A stretch of DNA of 64,000 nt, taken from the NCBI RefSeq assembly GCF_003704095.1, contig NW_020845389.1, forward strand, positions 310,001 through 374,000. The letters run 5' to 3'. This DNA is from Pocillopora damicornis (taxonomy: Eukaryota). Below the pieces are notes generated by a model. The model was not told the origin of the DNA. It saw only the letters and a program-made list of their open reading frames with translations, and searched no databases. This document shows positions 11,460-26,729 of the stretch, piece after piece (positions within the stretch are counted from its first letter, which is position 1; each line of letters starts with the position of its first letter). A program made the position numbers and the translations under genes.

Positions 11460-12486
11460 ATGGACTTTAAAATTATAGTTTTGGTGGTGCTGATATCTGT
11501 GGTTTATGTCTCCGAAGGGAAACCATATGAAGAATTCCGTAAGTTGCTTTGTCTTTTTAAAAGAATCATCTTTTAGTCCAAGTTTAAGTCGTGAAGTACC
11601 AGCAGTATCTAAAATCTCTTTATTCCACGATGCATCACCTATCAAAAACGTTTTCAGAACGAACTTAAAATTACCTGTCAACTCTAGTAAATCTCACACT
11701 CAACCAGTAGTTTGAAATTGACGAAAGTAGGAAAGAAAATTTATGTAAAATCAGAAATTGGTATTTGTAAAATCTTCAATATTTTGGTAACACAACACTA
11801 TAATAACGAGCAAAGATGCTCCCATTTCCCTATGAAGTTCCATAAGTTATATTGATACTTGACAAAGACACCTGTTTGTAGTAAGCATCGTAGAGAAAGC
11901 ATTTTCAACTTTTCATTCACAGAGATAACTATATTAAAGTGATCAGAGTTTTCCCTATATGTTCCCGTTAGTTCCTAACTGCGAGAACAGTCTTCCTCAT
12001 AAAAAGTGTCGCCAAAATCCGCAAAAGAAGAAAGCTGCTTTCGAATCAAACTTACTTTTCTCTTTTGCTCCACTTATACTTACGCTGGGTTTTTTTATTA
12101 AATCCGGGGGAGAAATCATTATATCTTTGTTCATAAAAATTTAGTTCTATACCATAAAACTAATAAACTTTTATTGCATTTTTTCAGTCAACAAGGTCTT
12201 AAGAAGTAATCCACTGCCTTGTTCTCGGTCCTGTTGTGAAAAGTGTTGCACAAACGTTTGTAGAAGAGACTGTATATTTTCGTGTTGTGCAGCCCGTCCA
12301 CTCGGCCCATACCCACCTCCCCCTGCACCGCCTCCCCCATACCCAGCCCCAACACCACAGCTCATCCCCGGACCGCCAGGATTCGCAGGAATTTGTGGAT
12401 TGCCAGGACCTCATGGACCTAGAGGATGCCCCGGCTGCGTTGGACCACCAGGACCACCCGGACCTCCGGGACCCCCGGGACGCTAA
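11460..12486 (+). CDS. Gene 4: minicollagen-like protein (~125 aa) with an expanded 9-Cys N-terminal domain, 12 Gly-X-Y and no C-terminal CRD
   Basis: Exons 11460-11538 (MDFKIIVLVVLISVVYVSEGKPYEEF; donor GTAAGT 11539) and 12188-12486 (LNKVLRSNPLPCSRSCCEKCCTNVCRRDCIFSCC-Pro-rich-GPPGFAGICGLPGPHGPRGCPGCV(GPP)4GR*). The coding frame is absent from the ORF track because this exon has no in-frame start codon near its 5' end. Confidence 0.88.
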
Positions 12487-14193: not shown

Positions 14194-15272
14194 ATGGATT
14201 ATCGGTTGGCTGTACTATTCACCCTGGGGCTAGCCTACACCGCCTCGTCGATGCACAGTAAGTTCAAATACAGTTTGGTATACTCTTATCACCAAACCCA
14301 AATACCAAACCAGTAACTTCAATTGATAGAATAAAAAGAAAAATAAGCTAGAAACTTAGATTTAAATAATGAGATGGCGTGGAAGCCCAATGTAAATCTC
14401 TCGGACTTGCTTTGAGCTTACTCGGTTTTACCAAAATTCTTCGCTGATTTTTTTTCCATCTTTAAAAAGATCTATCTATACAACAGGGCTACAACCAACA
14501 CAATGAATTGCCTCGAGATAGCGGTTTCAGAGAATATTTATCGCTCACTTCCTCTATATCTAGAAAAGTTTGCGTTCTGAGGTCCAGGCACACAAGAGCC
14601 TCGAATTCTGAAGAGTCATTAGCATGACCGAGCTTGCATATATCCACAATTTTGACGGCTGGCTCATCAAAAACCTATCCAAATTTATTCCTTTTATAAA
14701 ACGATTGGATGGCGAAGGCACTAACTGACTGACCGACAGACTGGCTGACTGATTGGCATCTTCCTTAAAAGACCTTACCAACTAACCGATTGACTGAATG
14801 AAAAATTAATCATCTCACTTTTTGACTGACCGACTAATTGACTGACTGACTGACAGAATAGAAGTCGAACTTTAAAAACGACCCTAGATATTATAGCAAT
14901 CGAACGTGTATGAGCTAAATGGAATGAAATGCTTGTTTCATAGCAAAGCGTGCAGCCTTCCCATGCGGAGCTGGCTGTCTTCCGCAGTGTGCCCCAAACT
15001 GCCTTGCAGACTGCTGCGGTAGTCCTCCACCAGCACCACCCGACCCACCTCTCCCAGCTGTGTCAGACATGATGAAGCCTCAGCCAGCACCTATCGTTGG
15101 ACCACAGGGACATCCTGGGTCACAGGGTTCCCCAGGAGTGATGGGACCTGTAGGACCCCCGGGAATTGGCGGAGCCCCCGGACCTCCGGGACCACCCGGA
15201 CCACCAGGACCTCCTGCACCCCCTGCTCCACCTGCTCCTGCGTGTTGTGCGGTGCCGCCCCCAGGGAAGTAA
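14194..15272 (+). CDS. Gene 5: minicollagen (~130 aa) with a canonical N-terminal CRD, 13 Gly-X-Y and a C-terminal CRD reduced to CC
   Basis: Exons 14194-14257 ([21 protein letters not shown]; donor GTAAGT 14258) and 14944-15272 (TKR|[22 protein letters not shown]-polyPro-(GXY)13[18 protein letters not shown]). Probable 5'UTR donor at 13943. Confidence 0.92.
14720..14855. repeat. Degenerate (GACT)n microsatellite in the gene 5 intron
   Basis: Repeated CTGA/CCGA/CTAA tetramers, e.g. TGACTGACTGACTGACAGA. Confidence 0.7.
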
Positions 15273-19294: not shown

Positions 19295-20825
19295 TAGTAT
19301 GCCAAGATGTTCGAAAAGCGATTAGAAGTACTAATCGATGTTCTCGTTTTGTTATCCAAAGTAATCATATGGGCCAATCAGATGAAAGGAAAATGTCACG
19401 AGAAGCCAATGAGAACTCAAAGTAAAAGCAGGCAAACTAACTGAGCCAATCACAACAGAGAAGATCAAAACCAAAGCGATCCCAGGTTGCCTTCGACAAT
19501 CAATCGAAAATTGCTCTAACGGACTCGGTGTCCAAACTCAGTTAGCTGAGAATACCGACAAAGTTAGTTCCTAATTATTTTTATTTTTCTGGTCCGATAA
19601 TGAGATTTTTAATTCATTTAATAATCGTAGATCGAGGATACAGCTTCTCTGAAAATGAAAATAGTGTAGCCTGAACCGATACGAGCCTTATGATACCTTT
19701 TCATCTTTTTCAATACCAGCACGAAAAACCCACCAGCTAAACGCATCAAGGGATAAAATGTTTGTTTAGCAGTCTCCGGTTGTGAGCAGACGATAAACGT
19801 ATATAATGGCCAGATTATCCAACTGATTTTTCAAAACGCTCACATAAGAAAAAGGCTAATTATTCTGCATGAAGGAAGCTTTTACGTTGGCAAGTCTCAA
19901 AACAGCCCGGTTCAAAAATGATTGAAAAAATTGAGAGAAAATCTAAAATTAAAGTACCAAATCGACCGCAATCTATTATTAATGGCTGAGAATCAGCGAT
20001 CGCCATTCAAAGAGAATGCAAACGTCGATAGGTTTTCACAGTTGCCATTTTAAGTGTTTGTAAGGTTTTAAGTTGAATTAGCTCGCGCATAGATATGCTT
20101 TCCAATCTCGGTAAGAAAACGAAAACCTCTTCGGAGTAGCTTTTGAGGCTTCTGTCACCAGTGTTACATTACTTGCTCGACGTTATCTAATATTATCAAC
20201 ACCTTGGCGGATGTTTTTTTCTCTACTTCCATCTACAATTCTGTCGGTTTTTTTTCAGATTTCATCCTCTTCCGCTTCTTGAATTGATCATCAGTGCATG
20301 AGTGATTTACTTAATATAACCGGCACGACATTTGGCCTTCGCTTGCTCGCATCCAAGTGAAATCTAATAACATTTTAGACCTTGCCTGGTCTCTATAAAA
20401 AATTGAACGGTTCAAAAGCTAAAGAACAATGGTTTGAACCGGTACCGTGAAGGGCAGGTCAATAACCCTTGCTTATTCTTACATCATGAGTAGATAACGA
20501 GGATTGTTCCCTTCTATTTCCCCCTGTGGTAAAATAACAACAAACAGCATTTTCTCTTGGGTGGAAAAGGTTATCGGAAGAAGGTAAAACGTGAAATTTA
20601 AGCGATAGAGCCATCTTAATTCACCTTTAGCGAGCTCAGAATGTGTTTAAGTCCGTGACGCATTGGAAGGCACTTAAAATTTCGGGTTCGCCTAAGTTGT
20701 CCTCAGCTCTTCAAGTTGGTGAACCAGAACACTTCCGAGCCAAAACAATTATGGATTGTACGTAGATCTGAGTTAAATTGTTTCACAACCTATAACGAGT
20801 TCTTTCTTTTCAATCCTTCAGGAAA

Positions 20826-23510
20826 ATGGGGATAAGATTTTTCGTATTTGTTGTCCTTTTGGGACTAACACTTTCTACATTAGACGCCAAGTCTTTAAAA
20901 GGTAAGAGAATCTTTTCTAAAAATATTTGGTATTTTATATTCATCAGTTGATATCATAGAAAGTTTTCACAAATCTCTGAAATATCTTCTTTCCTCTCCT
21001 GAGAGCAAATAATTCTTTAAATACACTTCACCGTGTGCAAAGTGTGCAATCTAAACTTGAACCACTTTTGAAGGCCACGGTTGGATTAACTAAACAATTT
21101 AATATTTTATCGAATGCAATGTTTCCCTCTTAATCAACTTAATAGGAGGGGTTTTTCAGCGTTAATCTCTTCCCGATACTGCTATGAAATTTAACTGTAA
21201 TTTAGTGCGTAACACTGTGACAGTTTGAGAAAAATTAGGTTGAATCAAGCTACCACAACAAAACGTAAAACCATCTTAGCTACAACCATTTTAACTCCTT
21301 AAATTTGTGAACTGTTGAAGAAGAATACTTAAAACGAAGAATTTAAATTTGCATAGTTTCCGACTTTTCACTTTAGCTAAGTTTAGTTAAGCGGTTTGAT
21401 CTCTTCTCGAGTATCTGATGATCGGGGTAAAAACACACGTGAGAAGACTGTCTGTGATCTGCGTCATAATTGACTTTATGTGTAAGGTTACTTGATACTC
21501 ACAAAACTCTTCACACAATGGCTATCACAATTTCTCAGAAATGATTAGTGAAAGAGTCAAGTTATTTAAGGGAGTTAGGTATAAAAGTTCTTTTATACCG
21601 CTGACCTTCTTTTAATTTTAAATTTTTTTTTCTTCTCTCCCCTACAAAAGGACACAAGAAATCCAAGCACGGTAAGCTCCTTAAAGCTCTCATTCATACG
21701 GGGCCCGAGAAAGGTAATCAATGAATCGCTCATTTGCATGCCCATGTTTCAACTGAAATTTGCATGTGGAACGGACACCGTATGTAATGGCTTGTGCAGA
21801 TTTGCTATGGTTAACGTTACTAAGAAAAGATTAGAACTGCAATTCCCTAATTCCGCACTTACTTTAGACTGCTGAAGCTTGGAAGTGGTTCCAAAAGGTA
21901 CGGTGATGCTTCCGAAATTTAAAAATGAACATGACAATAATTTGAACACCTCACAAGATCACGAATGCACCTCTCAATCTTGATTGAAACGATTAAAGGC
22001 AGCCGAAACACTGAATTTAATGTTAGAAAAACCTCCTAGATCATGTTTGCTTTACTATGCCGTACACATATACGGTCAAAGAAACCAAGGTTACACTACT
22101 TTCTGCAAGAGCGGCTTCCTTGGGAAAATCGCGATAGTTTCTGGCTTTTTTCGTTGCTTGTCAGAGAAAGGCCGTGCAAAATGTTCTGATTTCCTCTTAA
22201 TTTGTCATAGACGAAGACACAAAGAAGAATGATGAACCTGCTGCCGAAGAAGCCTCAGGAAGTGCTGCTGGTAAGTGGGTAGCATGTGCACATTTAGGGC
22301 TTTAGCCTGTTAAGACGTTTTTTACATGTAGGCAACATACACACACACTTGAGGATAGCATCCGTGATCTGAAAATGGTCTCCACCAACACATTTTCGCC
22401 TAGAATCCAGACCTGGCGAGCGTGTCTTTGCTCATCCGCCATTGACTTGGAAAAATAAAACTCAAAACAAAGTTTGATAGGAAATAAAGCAATACTCAAT
22501 GCATCTGTCATATCTGCCTTTACTCCTCGCGGACTATTCGGGTTACGTTGTGTCAATTATCAAGCTCAAAACTTTTTCTCGTTCAAACATAATTATAGGT
22601 GCATCCGCAGCCGGAAGTGGAGAAGAATCCGGCTCCACCGAAGAAGGTATGCTTGTTTTATTTCTTGGAATATTGTCCAGATTACTTTGAGCTTTTTTGC
22701 CATAAATCACTCAAGGTAATTTGATAACCTCTATGTGGCAAAGCGTCAATTCTAGTTTGTCATAAGAGACAAAAACATGAAAGAGATTAAATTTCTAGCA
22801 GAGCGTTCGAGTAGACTTTAGGGTACTCTTGGCGTGTAAAGGGGATTCGAGTTTTTTTGTTTCTTTGATTCGAGGTTTTTGTTTTCCTTACTAAGAAGCA
22901 AACAAAGTGTTAATTATTGAAACGAAAAACTTAGACTGCTTAATTAGTTTTGCAATCAGAGGGAGTAATATACAACACTGTTACTATTTCGGCTGGTGCC
23001 TTATTGACATTCAGTTCACATTTCATTACTGCAGTAGGTGTTTTCTGTCCACAGCCTTTTGCACAGATTTAATTTCGTTTTCCTTATTCTGTTCTGACAG
23101 CTCCACCAACTGAAGGTGAAGGACCACCTCCTCTCGTAGTCCCCACCCCTGCCCCTGAACCCCGAATCTGCCCTGGCACCTGTCCCCAAGTGTGCGCACC
23201 AGCCTGTATGGAGAACTGTTGTCAAACACCCATGCCCCCACCCTGCACACCACCTGGTCCTTGCCCTGCTCCCTTGCCGGTACCAATGCCTGCTCCTTGT
23301 CCCTCAGTTTGTGCACCAATGAATCTTCCCTCATGTTGCCAAGCTCCACCCCCTCCACCCCCTCCCCCACCCCCACCTCCACCACCAGCCGGTCCCCCAG
23401 TTGTTCTTTGTGGAACTACCTGTGTTGATGGATGCGGACCGACTTGCCCACCACAATGCTGCAAGCACCACAAGAGAGGACAACTAAAGAGAACCTCGCA
23501 CAAACACTGA
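20826..23510 (+). CDS. Gene 7 isoform A: collagen-free polyproline/3-CRD protein with an acidic Ser-Gly segment (~204 aa)
   Basis: Exons 20826-20901 (MGIRFFVFVVLLGLTLSTLDAKSLK), 21651-21671 (GHKKSKH), 22211-22270 (DEDTKKNDEPAAEEASGSAA), 22599-22646 (GASAAGSGEESGSTEE) and 23101-23510 (CPGTCPQVCAPACMENCC; CPSVCAPMNLPSCC; polyPro; CGTTCVDGCGPTCPPQCC; basic tail). All introns are phase-1 GT-AG and the total length is divisible by 3. Confidence 0.82.
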
Positions 23511-24112
23511 GACTTAGTCAATCATCTCTCAGCTGTAAATAGAACTGTGATGGTACTCCTTGGATGTCCAAGGAATTACATAGCTGATTTAGAAATCATT
23601 CCAAGAATGCTATAGTTAATACAATAATTGAACTTTGATAATCAATGATTTTTCAACGAAATGTAATTTAAATTTAGATTGGTTTACGGTTAGGACAGAT
23701 TGATTTTATAATATGATTTGAAGGAATAAATTTGTTCTGATTAATGTTTTGAGACAAGTTTCTTGAGAATTCTCTGTTCCTCTTCTTGAACGTTTGGCAA
23801 GGCTTCCCATCTTTAACTTCTGGCTCAGTTTTCTATGCTTGCATGTTTGACAACAACTTATAGAAAGGAAAGAGGAAGCACATTTTGAAAAGCGAATGAC
23901 CTGATCATTATCGTCTGCCACCGAGTTAAAGCTCGGGAGCCTTGACTCTTTGTAATTTTCACTAAATTTTACACTTTTAGGTAGAATGTATCTACCGCAA
24001 GTGCGATCTCTTTCGACAAATTACTGTTTGGCAAAAAGAAATATAGGAAACATAAAGTCTAACTGTTGTCAAAAATGTAAGCTAATCCATTTTCTTTCCT
24101 TTCCTTTCGTAG

Positions 24113-24651
24113 CTGAGGCAACTTCGACGCCTAAACTACCATTTAAGGTTGTAGGTCCTCTAGGGGGACACCCACATCCAGGTCCTCCAGCTGCATACAA
24201 TCCGTGTCCCCAGCCTCGATACTGCGACCCCGCCAGGTGCAAAGATCCAATTGGATGTGCTCCATCGTGCTCTGAGACTTGCTGTGCCGATATTCTTATT
24301 CCACCACCTACTCCACCCGTCGGTTCTGGGGCAGGTCCATGCCCTGATGCATGCGCACCGACATATCAGCCTTCGTGTTGCATGGGTGCCCCTCCCCCTA
24401 TGGCTACTCAGCCATTTCCTCAACCCGTATATCCCCCTATGGGACCTCAACCAGGATTCGCACCCCCAGCTGGTTATGGTCAACCTGTAGTCATTCCGCA
24501 GCCTCCACCTGGCGGATGTGGACAGAGCTGCTTAGCCACAAATTGTGCCCCACCCTGCCCACCGCAGTGCTGTCGAAGAAAGAAGTCAGTGATTCACCAC
24601 CACGACCGTAAGACGAGATCTTTAACGTCACGCTTTGCAATGTGCCACTAG
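24113..24651 (+). CDS. Orphan 3-CRD terminal exon, probably the alternative last exon of gene 7 (isoform B, ~247 aa)
   Basis: Strong polypyrimidine acceptor (TTTCTTTCCTTTCCTTTCGTAG, AG 24111-24112), phase 1 and compatible with the donor at 22647. Encodes CKDPIGCAPSCSETCC, CPDACAPTYQPSCC and CGQSCLATNCAPPCPPQCC plus an RRKK tail. I found no signal-peptide exon between 23510 and 24113. Confidence 0.75.
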
Positions 24652-26729
24652 TCTTTCAAAAATAGATTTACACGGGTCAGACATCGTGGAAGACGAAGCG
24701 AGCATGTTTTAATATGCTTATAGTTATCAATCAGAAAAAAAGGTGTTCATACTTCTCTTTCCTAAAACAACTTCCCGAGCTAACTCTAGGCTTTGGCTTA
24801 ACCGAATAGCTAACAATTTGTATTTAGAGAAGGTTATAAAAAATTTGGAATTTAGGAAAGAAAAGCCACACATAAAGACACTTAACTTCAACATTACTGT
24901 GGCTTTCGACGACATAGATTATGCCTGTTTCTAGTATAAGGGTCTTGAATGTTGGTAAAACGAAGGTGATTTTCTTTACTACGGTTATACAGGTTTTTCC
25001 ACATCATAACCCTTAAGAAGACATTTGGTGATATTAAAGAGCCCGATAAGTATCTGCTTCTTGACAGGAGTGTAGATAAATTGGGTCTGCCAGACTTTCT
25101 TGAAGGTCAAGAGGATTTATTTCTTCTTTCCCTTTTTCGAAAAAATAAAAACGAGTTCATAGTTCAGCAATTTGTCTTGTCTTGTCAAATTTACACTGGA
25201 CGTAAAGCAAAGAGTGCAAGGTTATCATCCTCTGCTCTTGTGGGGATACATATCATTGGTTGAAAATAGAGGAAATATACAATTTATTCACAAGTTTCAA
25301 TTGATCAACCATATTTTGGACTTAATTTTCAATTATGGACGAAAACATAATTTCTATCATCACTGCTCGCAAGTCTGAAACAATTGCCAACAAAAAATGA
25401 ATAATAGATATCTATGTAATCGTCGCCGATTAGCTCTTGAGCACATAGGAAAACCTCTTTCCTGAATATGAGTCATCACAGAAAAAATCATCATTCACCA
25501 GTTGAGGTTGTGCTATTTATGAAAACAACGTCCCCAAAGGAAGCATTCCTCACATCGATGCAAATCAAAGGCTTCCCTGCTAGTTAAGACATGTAAGATA
25601 GTTTGGGTAAATTATATGAACGAAATTTTCCCAGAATGCTCCATGAACCTCGGCGTCCCTCGGCTTGTTCCTATTGTTTCGGATCAACACTTACCCTGGA
25701 AACCACTATCTTCTAAATCGGAGTTGTAATTTGAGTATATATGGTTTTTTTTTCCAATTTGAACATGTCTCTACTCTCCATGGTCAACTTTCATAATACA
25801 TATTATGGACGCTTTTACTATAGATTTTCTTCCTGTGTTACAAAACTTTTATTCTTACGGGCTGTAAATTATTCATGAGGAAATTAAGTGCACAGCGCTA
25901 CTCAACCAAGAGATCGCATAAAGGCTCTGGCATATAACGCCAACAAATTTCAAATTTGGGTTCATTAAGTTCTTGTAAACTTACAGAAATTTCGCTTATC
26001 TGGTGTTGAGAAGATTTTACTCTCGCAGGCAGGTAAAATGAAGACATCTCGTAAGTAAATTCAAACTGACCGGTACCTGTTTCAATGGCATTTACTTCAT
26101 AACTGAGAGAAACGCAAGAAAAGTTTCCTTGCCCCGTAAAATTTTCCAACTATCTTGGTGTTTCTTAAATCAACGCGATCTTAGGTATTGTTGGACAATT
26201 TGAAAGCGGAAATGATTCCCTGCCGCTAAAATTTCTTTGTCCATTTTATAAAGTTTTTCCACAACAGCTTTTTCCGTTCAAATCTCTTATTCCGGGCGAC
26301 ACCTCAAGCAATACCTGCAAATGGATGTTAGAAATTCATGATAGATATCTGATCTAATGGAACAAGGCCTTTTGCGACTGTGCCCTATATACGGCGCTAA
26401 GACACGAGCCAAGACGTAGTATTTGACGGCAGTCATTAATTTACTTATTGACTAGCAAGTTTGCTTTTTCTGAGTCATCTGTGTGTTCTCATTGGATAAC
26501 ACGGACTTGCGACATAACGGGTATCTACGAGTAAATGTGGTAGTTAATTATTCATGAGGAAGACCTTTGTGGTAGAGCCATTGAGGTGTCTTTGTTTGAT
26601 CTTGAAAAAAACCCTTCAACATATTTCTGACATGATTATCTAAACCTTGAAAAGTTCTTTTTCTACCATAGCCATAGCAAAATCAAATTGCTTCTTCGTC
26701 GATTTATTTACAAAGCAAAAGAGGTCAGA

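What the first reader, a model, noticed from the sequence alone, without database searches (positions are those of the whole stretch)
23101..24651. Duplicated, mutually exclusive last exons swap the whole CRD module of gene 7
Seen: two phase-1 acceptors (exons starting at 23101 and 24113), each followed by a stop-terminated exon with the same layout. That layout is CRD, then a CRD missing one Cys (CPSVCAPMNLPSCC versus CPDACAPTYQPSCC), then a CRD ending CPPQCC, then a basic His-containing tail. AATAAA lies at 23725 between them, and there is no separate signal exon. Exon A has a rigid 13-Pro run; exon B has a Gly/Gln/Tyr/Pro spacer. Established: nematogalectin is known to use alternative exons in a capsule-type-specific way. 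Inference: this is an isoform switch between capsule types or stages.
Basis: partly seen in the sequence, partly recalled or inferred. Interest (0 to 1): 0.75.

Follow-up and report, generated by a model that had tools for sequence, protein, structure and literature searches.

The report
One coral gene, two capsule-protein tails
A coral gene for a stinging-capsule structural protein makes two proteins with different cysteine-rich tail modules, by either reading through or splicing at a weak splice site 15 bases into its fifth exon, which is a familiar kind of RNA switch in a protein family where it had not been noted.

Summary
Both stop-terminated Cys/Pro-rich exons exist at 23101 and 24113, with the stated motifs and AATAAA at 23725. 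Both lie in RNA contigs of 4 of 4 runs laid.

The proposed wiring is wrong in one respect. Exon B is not joined to 22646; that junction was seen in 0 of 4 runs. In 3 of 4 runs (2 of 3 studies) the letters before 24113 are the end of exon 4 plus the first 13-15 letters of exon A. So B is spliced from an internal donor, AAG|GTGAAG at 23115/23116.

Exon A is therefore a composite terminal exon. Reading through the donor gives tail A (204 aa: CRD, 14-Pro rod, CRD). Splicing gives tail B (252 aa). All 10 full-length B-type sequences I read from other corals carry the APP(P)xE mini-exon. An Acropora model reads 17 residues further into exon-A-like sequence (19 of 20 identical).

A and B are each other's best in-window matches after composition correction. 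No isoform-A protein was found in the libraries searched.

Capsule-type or stage specificity remains untested. The scan's notes hold no earlier report of this. This is a new variant of a known kind, of moderate interest.

The parts
20826..20901 (+). Exon 1: ATG and signal peptide (25 codons + 1 nt, phase 1), donor AAG|GTAAGA
   Evidence: ORF; sequence; joint 20901>21651 in X1 and X2 (2 of 4 runs); the X2 contig starts at 20820
21651..21671 (+). Exon 2 (21 nt, GHKKSKH). An alternative donor at 21713 adds 42 nt in frame (GKLLKALIHTGPEK)
   Evidence: Joints 21671>22211 (X1, X2) and 21713>22211 (X5); translation; the same 14-15 aa difference separates RefSeq X1/X2 isoforms of Montipora and Porites
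22211..22270 (+). Exon 3 (60 nt, acidic)
   Evidence: Joint 22270>22599 in 4 of 4 runs
22599..22646 (+). Exon 4 (48 nt, Gly/Ser/Glu-rich), donor AAG|GTATGC
   Evidence: junction to 23101 shown as a joint in X5 and as matching loose ends on both sides in X1, X2 and X10
23101..23115 (+). Shared 15-nt mini-exon (APPTE), which is the 5' end of exon A and is present in both isoforms
   Evidence: The 28-letter loose end before 24111 in X1, X2 and X10 equals the last 15 nt of exon 4 plus the first 13 nt of this piece; unique in the window; APP(P)xE is present in 10 of 10 full-length B-type sequences read
23116..23121 (+). Internal 5' splice site GTGAAG (AAG|GTGAAG), lacking G at +5
   Evidence: the four constitutive donors all have G at +5, the two alternative donors do not
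23116..23510 (+). Read-through coding part of exon A: canonical CRD (23169-23222), 2 extra Cys, C3C7CC unit, 14-Pro run (23346-23387), canonical CRD (23409-23462), basic tail, TGA at 23508-23510
   Evidence: contigs run from 23099 onward in 4 of 4 runs
23511..23730 (+). 3' UTR of isoform A with AATAAA at 23725-23730, followed by a T/GT-rich stretch
   Evidence: the X10 contig 23324-23727 ends here and the next X10 contig starts at 23774. The exact cleavage site cannot be read from contigs
23731..24112 (+). Remainder of the last intron, with a strong polypyrimidine tract and AG at 24111-24112
   Evidence: 79% mean column identity to L004, which comes from a related coral
24113..24651 (+). Exon B coding part: conserved KVVGPLGGHPHPGPP, 7-Cys unit, C3C7CC unit, 45-aa Pro/Gly/Gln spacer, C3C4C3C3CC unit (24517-24573), basic His tail with a last Cys, TAG at 24649-24651
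   Evidence: orthologues at 62-83% identity in Porites, Acropora, Montipora and Desmophyllum
24652..25160 (+). 3' UTR of isoform B, AATAAA at 25144
   Evidence: Contigs end at 25155-25160 in X1, X2 and X10, and at 25086 in X5

Best explanation
Gene 7 is a secreted, collagen-less, minicollagen-type CRD protein gene. It sits in a cluster of CRD and minicollagen genes.

Its fifth exon is a composite terminal exon. Fifteen bases after the acceptor at 23101 lies a suboptimal 5' splice site, AAG|GTGAAG.

If that site is not used, translation runs on for 131 more codons through a CRD, polyproline and CRD module to a stop at 23508. The message ends near the AATAAA at 23725, or keeps the intron, which encodes the same protein. 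This gives isoform A, 204 aa, with a CPP-1-like architecture.

If the site is used, the 15-nt mini-exon is joined to 24113. A paralogous but much diverged module with a longer Pro/Gly/Gln/Tyr spacer is then made. This gives isoform B, 252 aa, which is the form annotated in other corals.

Shown: the exon chain, both outcomes in RNA contigs, the junction 23115>24113, and conservation of the mini-exon and of exon B.

Inferred: the choice is a kinetic competition between U1-dependent splicing and cleavage/polyadenylation. Both proteins are built into the capsule polymer through their CRDs. The swap changes the stiffness and length of the spacer and the Cys units offered for cross-linking.
For: Transcript evidence:
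- The junctions e1>e2>e3>e4>23101 are present. e3>e4 is seen in 4 of 4 runs, and e4>23101 in 4 of 4 (1 joint, 3 by loose ends on both sides).
- A 28-letter loose end before 24111 in X1, X2 and X10 (studies P1 and P4) consists of the exon-4 end plus the start of exon A. With the GT..AG rule this puts the junction at 23115|24113.
- X10 has a separate 58-nt junction contig.
- X10 also has separate contigs at 23324-23727, 23774-24140 and 24111-25155, with per-contig word depths of 201.9, 3.4 and 66.9. The tool warns that such depths are a poor measure.

Sequence evidence:
- the internal donor keeps phase 1. Isoform lengths are 204 and 252 aa. Only the two alternative donors lack +5G.
- 10 of 10 full-length B-type sequences read carry APP(P)xE between the exon-4-like part and exon B. 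These come from Porites, Montipora, Acropora and the mRNA contig L003.
- the A. cervicornis model P0005 reads through that point into GEGPPPLVVPTPTPEP. This matches the start of exon A at 19 of 20 residues with one inserted Ser, so the read-through frame is conserved in another family.
- exon A holds two perfect CX3CX3CX3CX3CC units.
- A and B are single-copy in the 234-Mb assembly.
- A and B are homologous.
- PMC6910907 (passages): Hydra CPP-1 is a polyproline stretch flanked by CRDs, and CRD proteins are cross-linked into the capsule wall.
Against: - No isoform-A protein was found in any library. There were 0 hits among 368 candidates. One search gave 3 hits, of which P0012 is a compositional Pro/Ala-repeat match, P0013 is a repeat protein without CRDs that I judge unrelated, and P0014 is another CRD protein.
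- RefSeq models of Acropora, Montipora and Porites give only B-type forms.
- All RNA evidence is from assembled contigs. No poly(A) tail or cleavage site was seen, and the X10 contig ends at 23727, inside the AATAAA rather than after it.
- In X1, X2 and X5, contigs run unspliced from 23099 into exon B, as pre-mRNA or DNA carry-over also would. No silent stretch was laid as a control for DNA carry-over.
- No protein-level or cell-type evidence exists here.
Confidence: 0.75

Rival explanations
1. One reading: two mutually exclusive last exons, each spliced directly to the exon-4 donor at 22646.
For: Both acceptors are phase 1, so a direct 22646>24113 join would stay in frame. Contigs drop rare variants, so a minor direct junction cannot be excluded (notes).
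Against: The 22646>24113 junction was seen in 0 of 4 runs. In the 3 runs that show what precedes 24113, the 15-nt start of exon A lies between exon 4 and exon B. None of the 10 full-length B-type sequences read lacks the APP(P)xE piece.
Confidence: 0.05
2. Only isoform B is functional. The exon-A read-through is intron retention or premature polyadenylation noise, or a decaying relic of a former terminal exon.
For: Annotations of five other coral species carry only B-type proteins. No isoform-A relatives were found in the libraries. Unspliced contigs across the whole intron occur in 3 of 4 runs.
Against: The read-through frame stays open for 131 codons, with two perfect 6-Cys CRDs, 18 Cys and a basic tail like that of B. 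Its first 20 residues are 19 of 20 identical in Acropora. AATAAA plus a T/GT-rich stretch follows the stop. In X10 the exon-A contigs are separate from the contig over the rest of the intron and have far higher word depth. The two single-base differences seen inside the exon-A coding part (23216, 23495) are both third-position and synonymous by my reading.
Confidence: 0.15
3. Exon B belongs to a separate downstream gene with its own promoter and first exon.
For: Library ORF calls such as P0001 (221 aa, 104 members) start at an ATG 127 nt upstream of the acceptor.
Against: That ORF simply reads through the acceptor and has no signal peptide. The junction contigs link exon 4, the mini-exon and exon B. 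L003 is a spliced mRNA contig from another coral with signal peptide, acidic exons, APPVE and exon B in one 254-aa ORF.
Confidence: 0.02

Closest known systems
Hydra CPP-1 (cnidarian proline-rich protein 1)
   Same: Isoform A has a continuous polyproline run (14 Pro) between 6-Cys CRDs and no Gly-X-Y triplets. This is the architecture given for CPP-1 in PMC6910907 (passages read).
   Different: Isoform A has extra Cys units between the first CRD and the Pro run (2 lone Cys plus a C3C7CC unit), an acidic N-terminal region, and an alternative tail. Sequence homology to Hydra CPP-1 was not tested, because no CPP-1 sequence was at hand.
Hydra Cnidoin
   Same: Isoform B, like Cnidoin, places a non-collagen, non-polyproline spacer between Cys-rich units (PMC6910907). 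This makes the A/B pair reminiscent of the rigid CPP-1 versus elastic Cnidoin contrast.
   Different: The B spacer is only 45 aa and Pro-dominated (17 P, 7 G, 5 Q), not a long silk-like domain. Elasticity is pure inference. Homology was not tested.
Minicollagens
   Same: A signal peptide, the CX3CX3CX3CX3CC units, polyproline, and genomic clustering with collagen-bearing CRD genes (ORFs 12145-12483 and 14928-15269). The CRD definition comes from PMC4863159.
   Different: Neither tail has a Gly-X-Y helix. It would fall under the 'minicollagen-like' proteins with incomplete features mentioned for Nematostella in PMC12549020 (passages).
Composite terminal exons / intronic polyadenylation (textbook case: immunoglobulin mu secreted versus membrane forms, recalled)
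   Same: A 5' splice site inside an exon competes with a poly(A) site in the downstream intron. Read-through gives one C-terminus and splicing gives another. The term and the role of U1 come from PMC4227790 (passages).
   Different: Here both outcomes encode homologous, duplicated structural modules, and only 15 nt precede the internal donor. The regulation is unknown.
[quoted passage not shown] 2010)
   Same: It is a precedent for isoform choice in a capsule structural gene. I saw only the title, in reference lists.
   Different: The paper is not held. As I recall, it concerns alternative internal exons, not a splice-versus-polyadenylation choice. No cell-type data exist for gene 7.

Membership tests
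Minicollagen (sensu stricto) | N- and C-terminal 6-Cys CRDs of pattern CX3CX3CX3CX3CC | tested here: met
   Isoform A has two exact units (23169-23222, 23409-23462). Isoform B has one near-canonical unit, C3C4C3C3CC. Pattern definition from PMC4863159.
Minicollagen (sensu stricto) | Central collagen helix of about 12-16 Gly-X-Y repeats | tested here: not met
   No Gly-X-Y run occurs in either translation. The gene is therefore not filed as a minicollagen.
CPP-1-like CRD protein | Continuous polyproline stretch flanked by CRDs, without a triple helix | tested here: met
   In isoform A a 14-Pro run lies between CRD units. Feature as stated in PMC6910907.
CPP-1-like CRD protein | Sequence homology to Hydra CPP-1 and location in the capsule wall | not tested
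   No CPP-1 sequence was available from a tool. There are no localisation data.
Composite terminal exon (splice versus polyadenylation alternative last exon) | A 5' splice site inside the exon is used in one isoform, joined to a downstream terminal exon | tested here: met
   The 23115>24113 junction is seen in 3 of 4 runs from 2 of 3 studies.
Composite terminal exon (splice versus polyadenylation alternative last exon) | Read-through transcripts end at a poly(A) site within the downstream intron | tested here: inconclusive
   AATAAA lies at 23725. The X10 contig ends at 23727, followed by a gap and then a low-depth contig. No tails are visible in contigs, and unspliced contigs span the whole intron in X1, X2 and X5.
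Composite terminal exon (splice versus polyadenylation alternative last exon) | Both forms share the upstream exons and promoter | tested here: met
   Exon 4 is joined to 23101 in 4 of 4 runs. The B junction contig carries the exon-4 end. L003 is a full-length mRNA.
Mutually exclusive alternative last exons as proposed (both joined to 22646) | Junction 22646>24113 | tested here: not met
   Seen in 0 of 4 runs. Absence from contigs is not proof for rare forms.
Tandem exon duplication | The two modules are closer to each other than to other CRD modules of the cluster | tested here: inconclusive
   With composition correction they are reciprocal best hits among 12 CRD-bearing ORFs (E 2e-8 and 4e-4). 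Without correction, A's best hit is ORF 54701-55099. They share the C3C7CC unit and the CPPQCC ending.

The most novel reading that the evidence does not exclude
An old, conserved one-gene mechanical switch. By letting a weak donor 15 nt into exon 5 win or lose against cleavage/polyadenylation, developing stinging cells would load the same secretory leader with one of two tails. One is a stiff CPP-1-like polyproline rod between canonical CRDs. The other is a longer flexible Pro/Gly/Gln/Tyr spacer with a non-canonical 7-Cys unit and a free terminal Cys. This would tune wall or tubule stiffness and cross-link valency by capsule type or stage. Isoform A would be a capsule protein missing from the coral annotations seen here.
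Probability: 0.3. Interest if true: 0.7.

Novelty: new variant of a known kind. Interest (0 to 1): 0.45.

Why it matters
Capsule walls are thought to get their mechanics from mixing stiff and compliant CRD-linked proteins that are encoded by separate genes (PMC6910907). A single gene that swaps its whole cross-linking and spacer module by an RNA-processing choice would add a regulatory layer to capsule diversity.

It also makes a testable prediction: isoform-specific probes should mark different cnidocyte types or stages.

It flags a protein, isoform A, that is absent from every annotation seen here (five other coral species) and from the two protein libraries searched, probably because pipelines discard 'retained-intron' forms.

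Practically, it corrects the gene model. Several library entries for this locus are ORFs that start inside the intron.

Tried and rejected
- Pfam scan of both tails: 0 families at E up to 10.
- Word search with exon A: 368 candidates, none at E 0.001 or better.
- Full HMMER search with exon A: 3 hits. P0012 is a 1930-aa Pro/Ala repeat protein (compositional match). P0013 is a repeat protein without CRDs that I judge unrelated. P0014 is another CRD protein and not an orthologue.
- Search with the N-terminal 72 residues of the Acropora model P0005, to catch A-type isoforms in Acropora: it found only itself among 262 candidates.
- Metagenome scan: 2 loci. L003 is a spliced B mRNA. L004 is genomic but starts about 11 nt after the position of the exon-A AATAAA, so it lacks exon A.
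- A promoter or first exon for B between 23511 and 24112: rejected.
- Other in-frame GT sites in exon A: 11 more exist, none with a splice-site-like context.
- Classing the CRDs as N- or C-type by the position-4 Val/Ile and position-14 Pro rule of PMC4863159: the first CRD of A has Thr4 and Met14. The last CRDs of both A and B have Pro14 but Thr4 or Ser4. The result is ambiguous, so I make no claim.
- Ranking isoform abundance: not possible from contig depths (warning).
- Literature searches (listings only); 41 papers, and the 15 listed have 0 occurrences of 'alternative polyadenylation'; 22 papers, and the 10 listed have 0 occurrences of 'cnidarian'. I found no description of this arrangement. 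Subscription papers and supplements, which were closed, may hold isoform tables or cell-atlas tables that bear on it.
- The assembly size (234,350,878 bases, 4393 contigs) reminds me of a published pocilloporid coral assembly. That is recall and was not tested.
Full report
**Setting**

The window is animal DNA (GC 0.34-0.46). It carries 23 minicollagen-type Cys patterns on the + strand. These fall into 12 stop-to-stop ORFs, two of which also hold collagen triplets (12145-12483 and 14928-15269). It is therefore a cluster of stinging-capsule structural genes of a stony coral. The RNA runs that hold the stretch are labelled coral or marine metagenome. The nearest named proteins are from Porites, Acropora, Montipora and Desmophyllum.

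**The observation**

Both exons are as described.
- From the acceptor at 23100/23101 the frame runs 135 codons to TGA.
- From 24112/24113 it runs 178 codons to TAG.
- The quoted motifs, the two CPPQCC endings, the basic His tails and AATAAA at 23725 are all there.

Small corrections apply.
- The Pro run has 14 residues, not 13.
- B's first Cys unit is non-canonical (C5C4C5C3C3CC).
- Both modules have 18 Cys.

**Gene structure from RNA**

I laid contigs of four RNA runs from three studies on 20500-25400. The exon chain is:
- exon 1, 20826-20901 (signal peptide);
- exon 2, 21651-21671;
- exon 3, 22211-22270;
- exon 4, 22599-22646;
- then the acceptor at 23101.

Support for each junction:
- e1>e2 and e2>e3 in X1 and X2;
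- e3>e4 in 4 of 4 runs;
- e4>23101 as a joint in X5, and as matching loose ends on both sides in X1, X2 and X10.

All exons are phase 1.

The decisive item is the loose end before 24111 in X1, X2 and X10. Its 28 letters are the last 15 of exon 4 followed by the first 13 of exon A. The next two letters (AG) fit both places. With the GT..AG rule, the junction is therefore 23115|24113.

The 15-mer is unique in the window. It occurs 3 times in the whole assembly, near the chance level, with 1 hit for the control pattern.

A direct 22646>24113 junction was seen in 0 of 4 runs. So exon B shares promoter, leader and exons 1-4 with exon A, and it also carries the first 15 nt of exon A.

**Exon A as a terminal exon**

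The internal donor is AAG|GTGAAG. It and the alternative donor of exon 2 (AAG|GTAATC) are the only two of six donors without G at +5.

If the donor is skipped, the frame continues to the stop at 23508. AATAAA at 23725 is followed by a T/GT-rich stretch.

In X10 the exon-A contigs (23099-23341 and 23324-23727) are separate from a contig over the rest of the intron (23774-24140) and from the exon-B contig (24111-25155). Their per-contig word depths are 132-202, 3.4 and 66.9. The tool warns that such depths are poor measures, so I take this only as suggestive of a proximal 3' end.

In X1, X2 and X5, contigs run unspliced from 23099 into exon B. Such a molecule, if exported, would still encode isoform A, because the stop at 23508 has no junction after it. 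No poly(A) tail can be seen in contigs. The 23727 contig end lies inside the hexamer, so the cleavage site is open. I laid no silent stretch as a control for DNA carry-over.

By arithmetic, isoform A is 204 aa and isoform B is 252 aa. Each is 14 aa longer with the exon-2 extension. Each exon was searched on its own.

**Relatives**

Exon B found 11 proteins among 144 candidates, and I read further cluster members. With the mRNA contig L003 from a metagenome, I read 10 full-length B-type sequences:
- Porites harrisoni, 2 sequences;
- P. lutea X1 and X2;
- Montipora foliosa X1 and X2;
- one sequence shared by Acropora millepora and A. muricata;
- A. palmata;
- A. cervicornis;
- L003.

All 10 have APP(P)TE or APPVE between the exon-4-like part and exon B, which agrees with the junction found here. 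Nine then go straight into exon B.

The A. cervicornis model P0005 instead reads on through SGEGPPPLVVPTPTPEP before joining B. Against the start of exon A in the window, that is 19 of 20 identical residues with one inserted Ser. So the read-through frame is conserved in a coral whose exon B is only 73% identical.

The other library entries (P0001, P0002, P0004, P0006, P0008-P0011, P0025) are fragments. Several of them start inside the intron.

Exon A found nothing in the word search (0 of 368 candidates). The exhaustive HMMER search gave only a compositional hit, a repeat protein that I judge unrelated, and another CRD protein.

Both exons are single-copy in the 234-Mb assembly. L004 starts just past the exon-A poly(A) signal.

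**Are A and B duplicates?**

- BLASTP aligns them colinearly at 46% identity over 90 aa, E 7e-9.
- Exon A also aligns over all three Cys units with the Acropora B module.
- Among the 12 CRD ORFs of the window they are reciprocal best hits when composition is corrected (2e-8 and 4e-4). Without correction, the Pro-rich ORF 54701-55099 beats B as A's partner.
- The C3C7CC unit (PCPxxCAPxxxPSCC) is shared by A and B. The short units in ORFs 54701-55099 and 59367-60344 read C3C3CC.

Duplication is likely but not proven.

**What it resembles**

Isoform A has the architecture given for Hydra CPP-1, a polyproline rod between CRDs. Isoform B replaces the rod by a 45-aa Pro/Gly/Gln/Tyr spacer. Hydra capsule walls combine stiff CPP-1 and elastic Cnidoin, cross-linked through CRDs (PMC6910907, passages).

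CRD folds differ in cross-link valency (PMC4863159, passages). By that paper's position-4 and position-14 rule, the CRDs here are ambiguous.

Minicollagens and minicollagen-like proteins are expressed differently among cnidocyte types in Nematostella (PMC12549020, passages). This makes type-specific isoform use plausible but does not test it.

The RNA mechanism belongs to composite terminal exons, or intronic polyadenylation, where U1 binding opposes intronic poly(A) use (PMC4227790, passages). The immunoglobulin example is recalled.

For nematogalectin's nematocyte-specific splicing I saw only a reference title, and the paper is not held.

**Verdict**

The sequence observation is confirmed. 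The idea of one gene with two alternative, homologous tail modules is supported by transcripts. The proposed splice wiring is replaced by an internal-donor (composite exon) mechanism.

Functional specificity is untested, and the standing of isoform A as a mature, translated product rests on indirect evidence.

My four literature searches (listings only) turned up no description of this. Supplements, which were closed, and subscription papers could hold relevant isoform or cell-atlas tables. The scan's own notes hold no earlier report of it.

Noticed in passing
window 21671-21713: Exon 2 has an alternative 5' splice site. It adds 42 nt, giving the 14 aa GKLLKALIHTGPEK, an amphipathic-looking insert. 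It is used in run X5. The same 14-15 aa difference separates the RefSeq X1 and X2 isoforms of Montipora foliosa, M. capricornis and Porites lutea, so the event is conserved.
   Followed up: partly
window 21614 (run X5): An X5 contig that lies on the window from 21614 is preceded by 104 letters that fit nothing in 20500-25400. X5 shows no exon1>exon2 joint. This could be a diverged allele or species, or another upstream exon. It is unexplained.
   Followed up: no
window 23986-24651; proteins P0001, P0002, P0004, P0006, P0010, P0025: Library 'proteins' for this locus are ORFs that begin inside the last intron and read through the acceptor (for example P0001, 221 aa, 104 members). They are gene-calling artefacts of intron-blind callers.
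   Followed up: yes
protein P0005 (Acropora cervicornis KAK2570406.1): This deposited model seems mis-spliced. It lacks the exon-2-like and exon-4-like parts that the RefSeq Acropora models have. It also reads through the mini-exon donor for 17 residues.
   Followed up: partly
window 54701-55099 and 59367-60344: Other genes of the cluster have the same CRD, short Cys unit (C3C3CC), long polyproline and CRD layout. Their Pro runs are longer than in exon A. Isoform A thus belongs to a local family of CPP-1-like modules.
   Followed up: partly
window 23800-23865 versus L004 55-125: This block of the last intron is better conserved against a related coral than the intron as a whole, whose mean column identity is 79%. 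It may be a regulatory element for the splice or poly(A) choice, or it may only reflect a close relationship.
   Followed up: no
protein P0009 (ENA, 184 aa): In one unnamed relative, the ORF just upstream of the conserved VPYKAIGPLGGHPHP start of the B module reads as part of a CRD (C3C3C3C). There the B module may follow a CRD directly.
   Followed up: no
window 24142-24186: The strictly conserved motif KVVGPLGGHPHPGPP opens exon B. G-G-H-P-H-P-G-P-P is invariant in 8 of 8 aligned sequences. It has no Pfam match, and its role is unknown.
   Followed up: no
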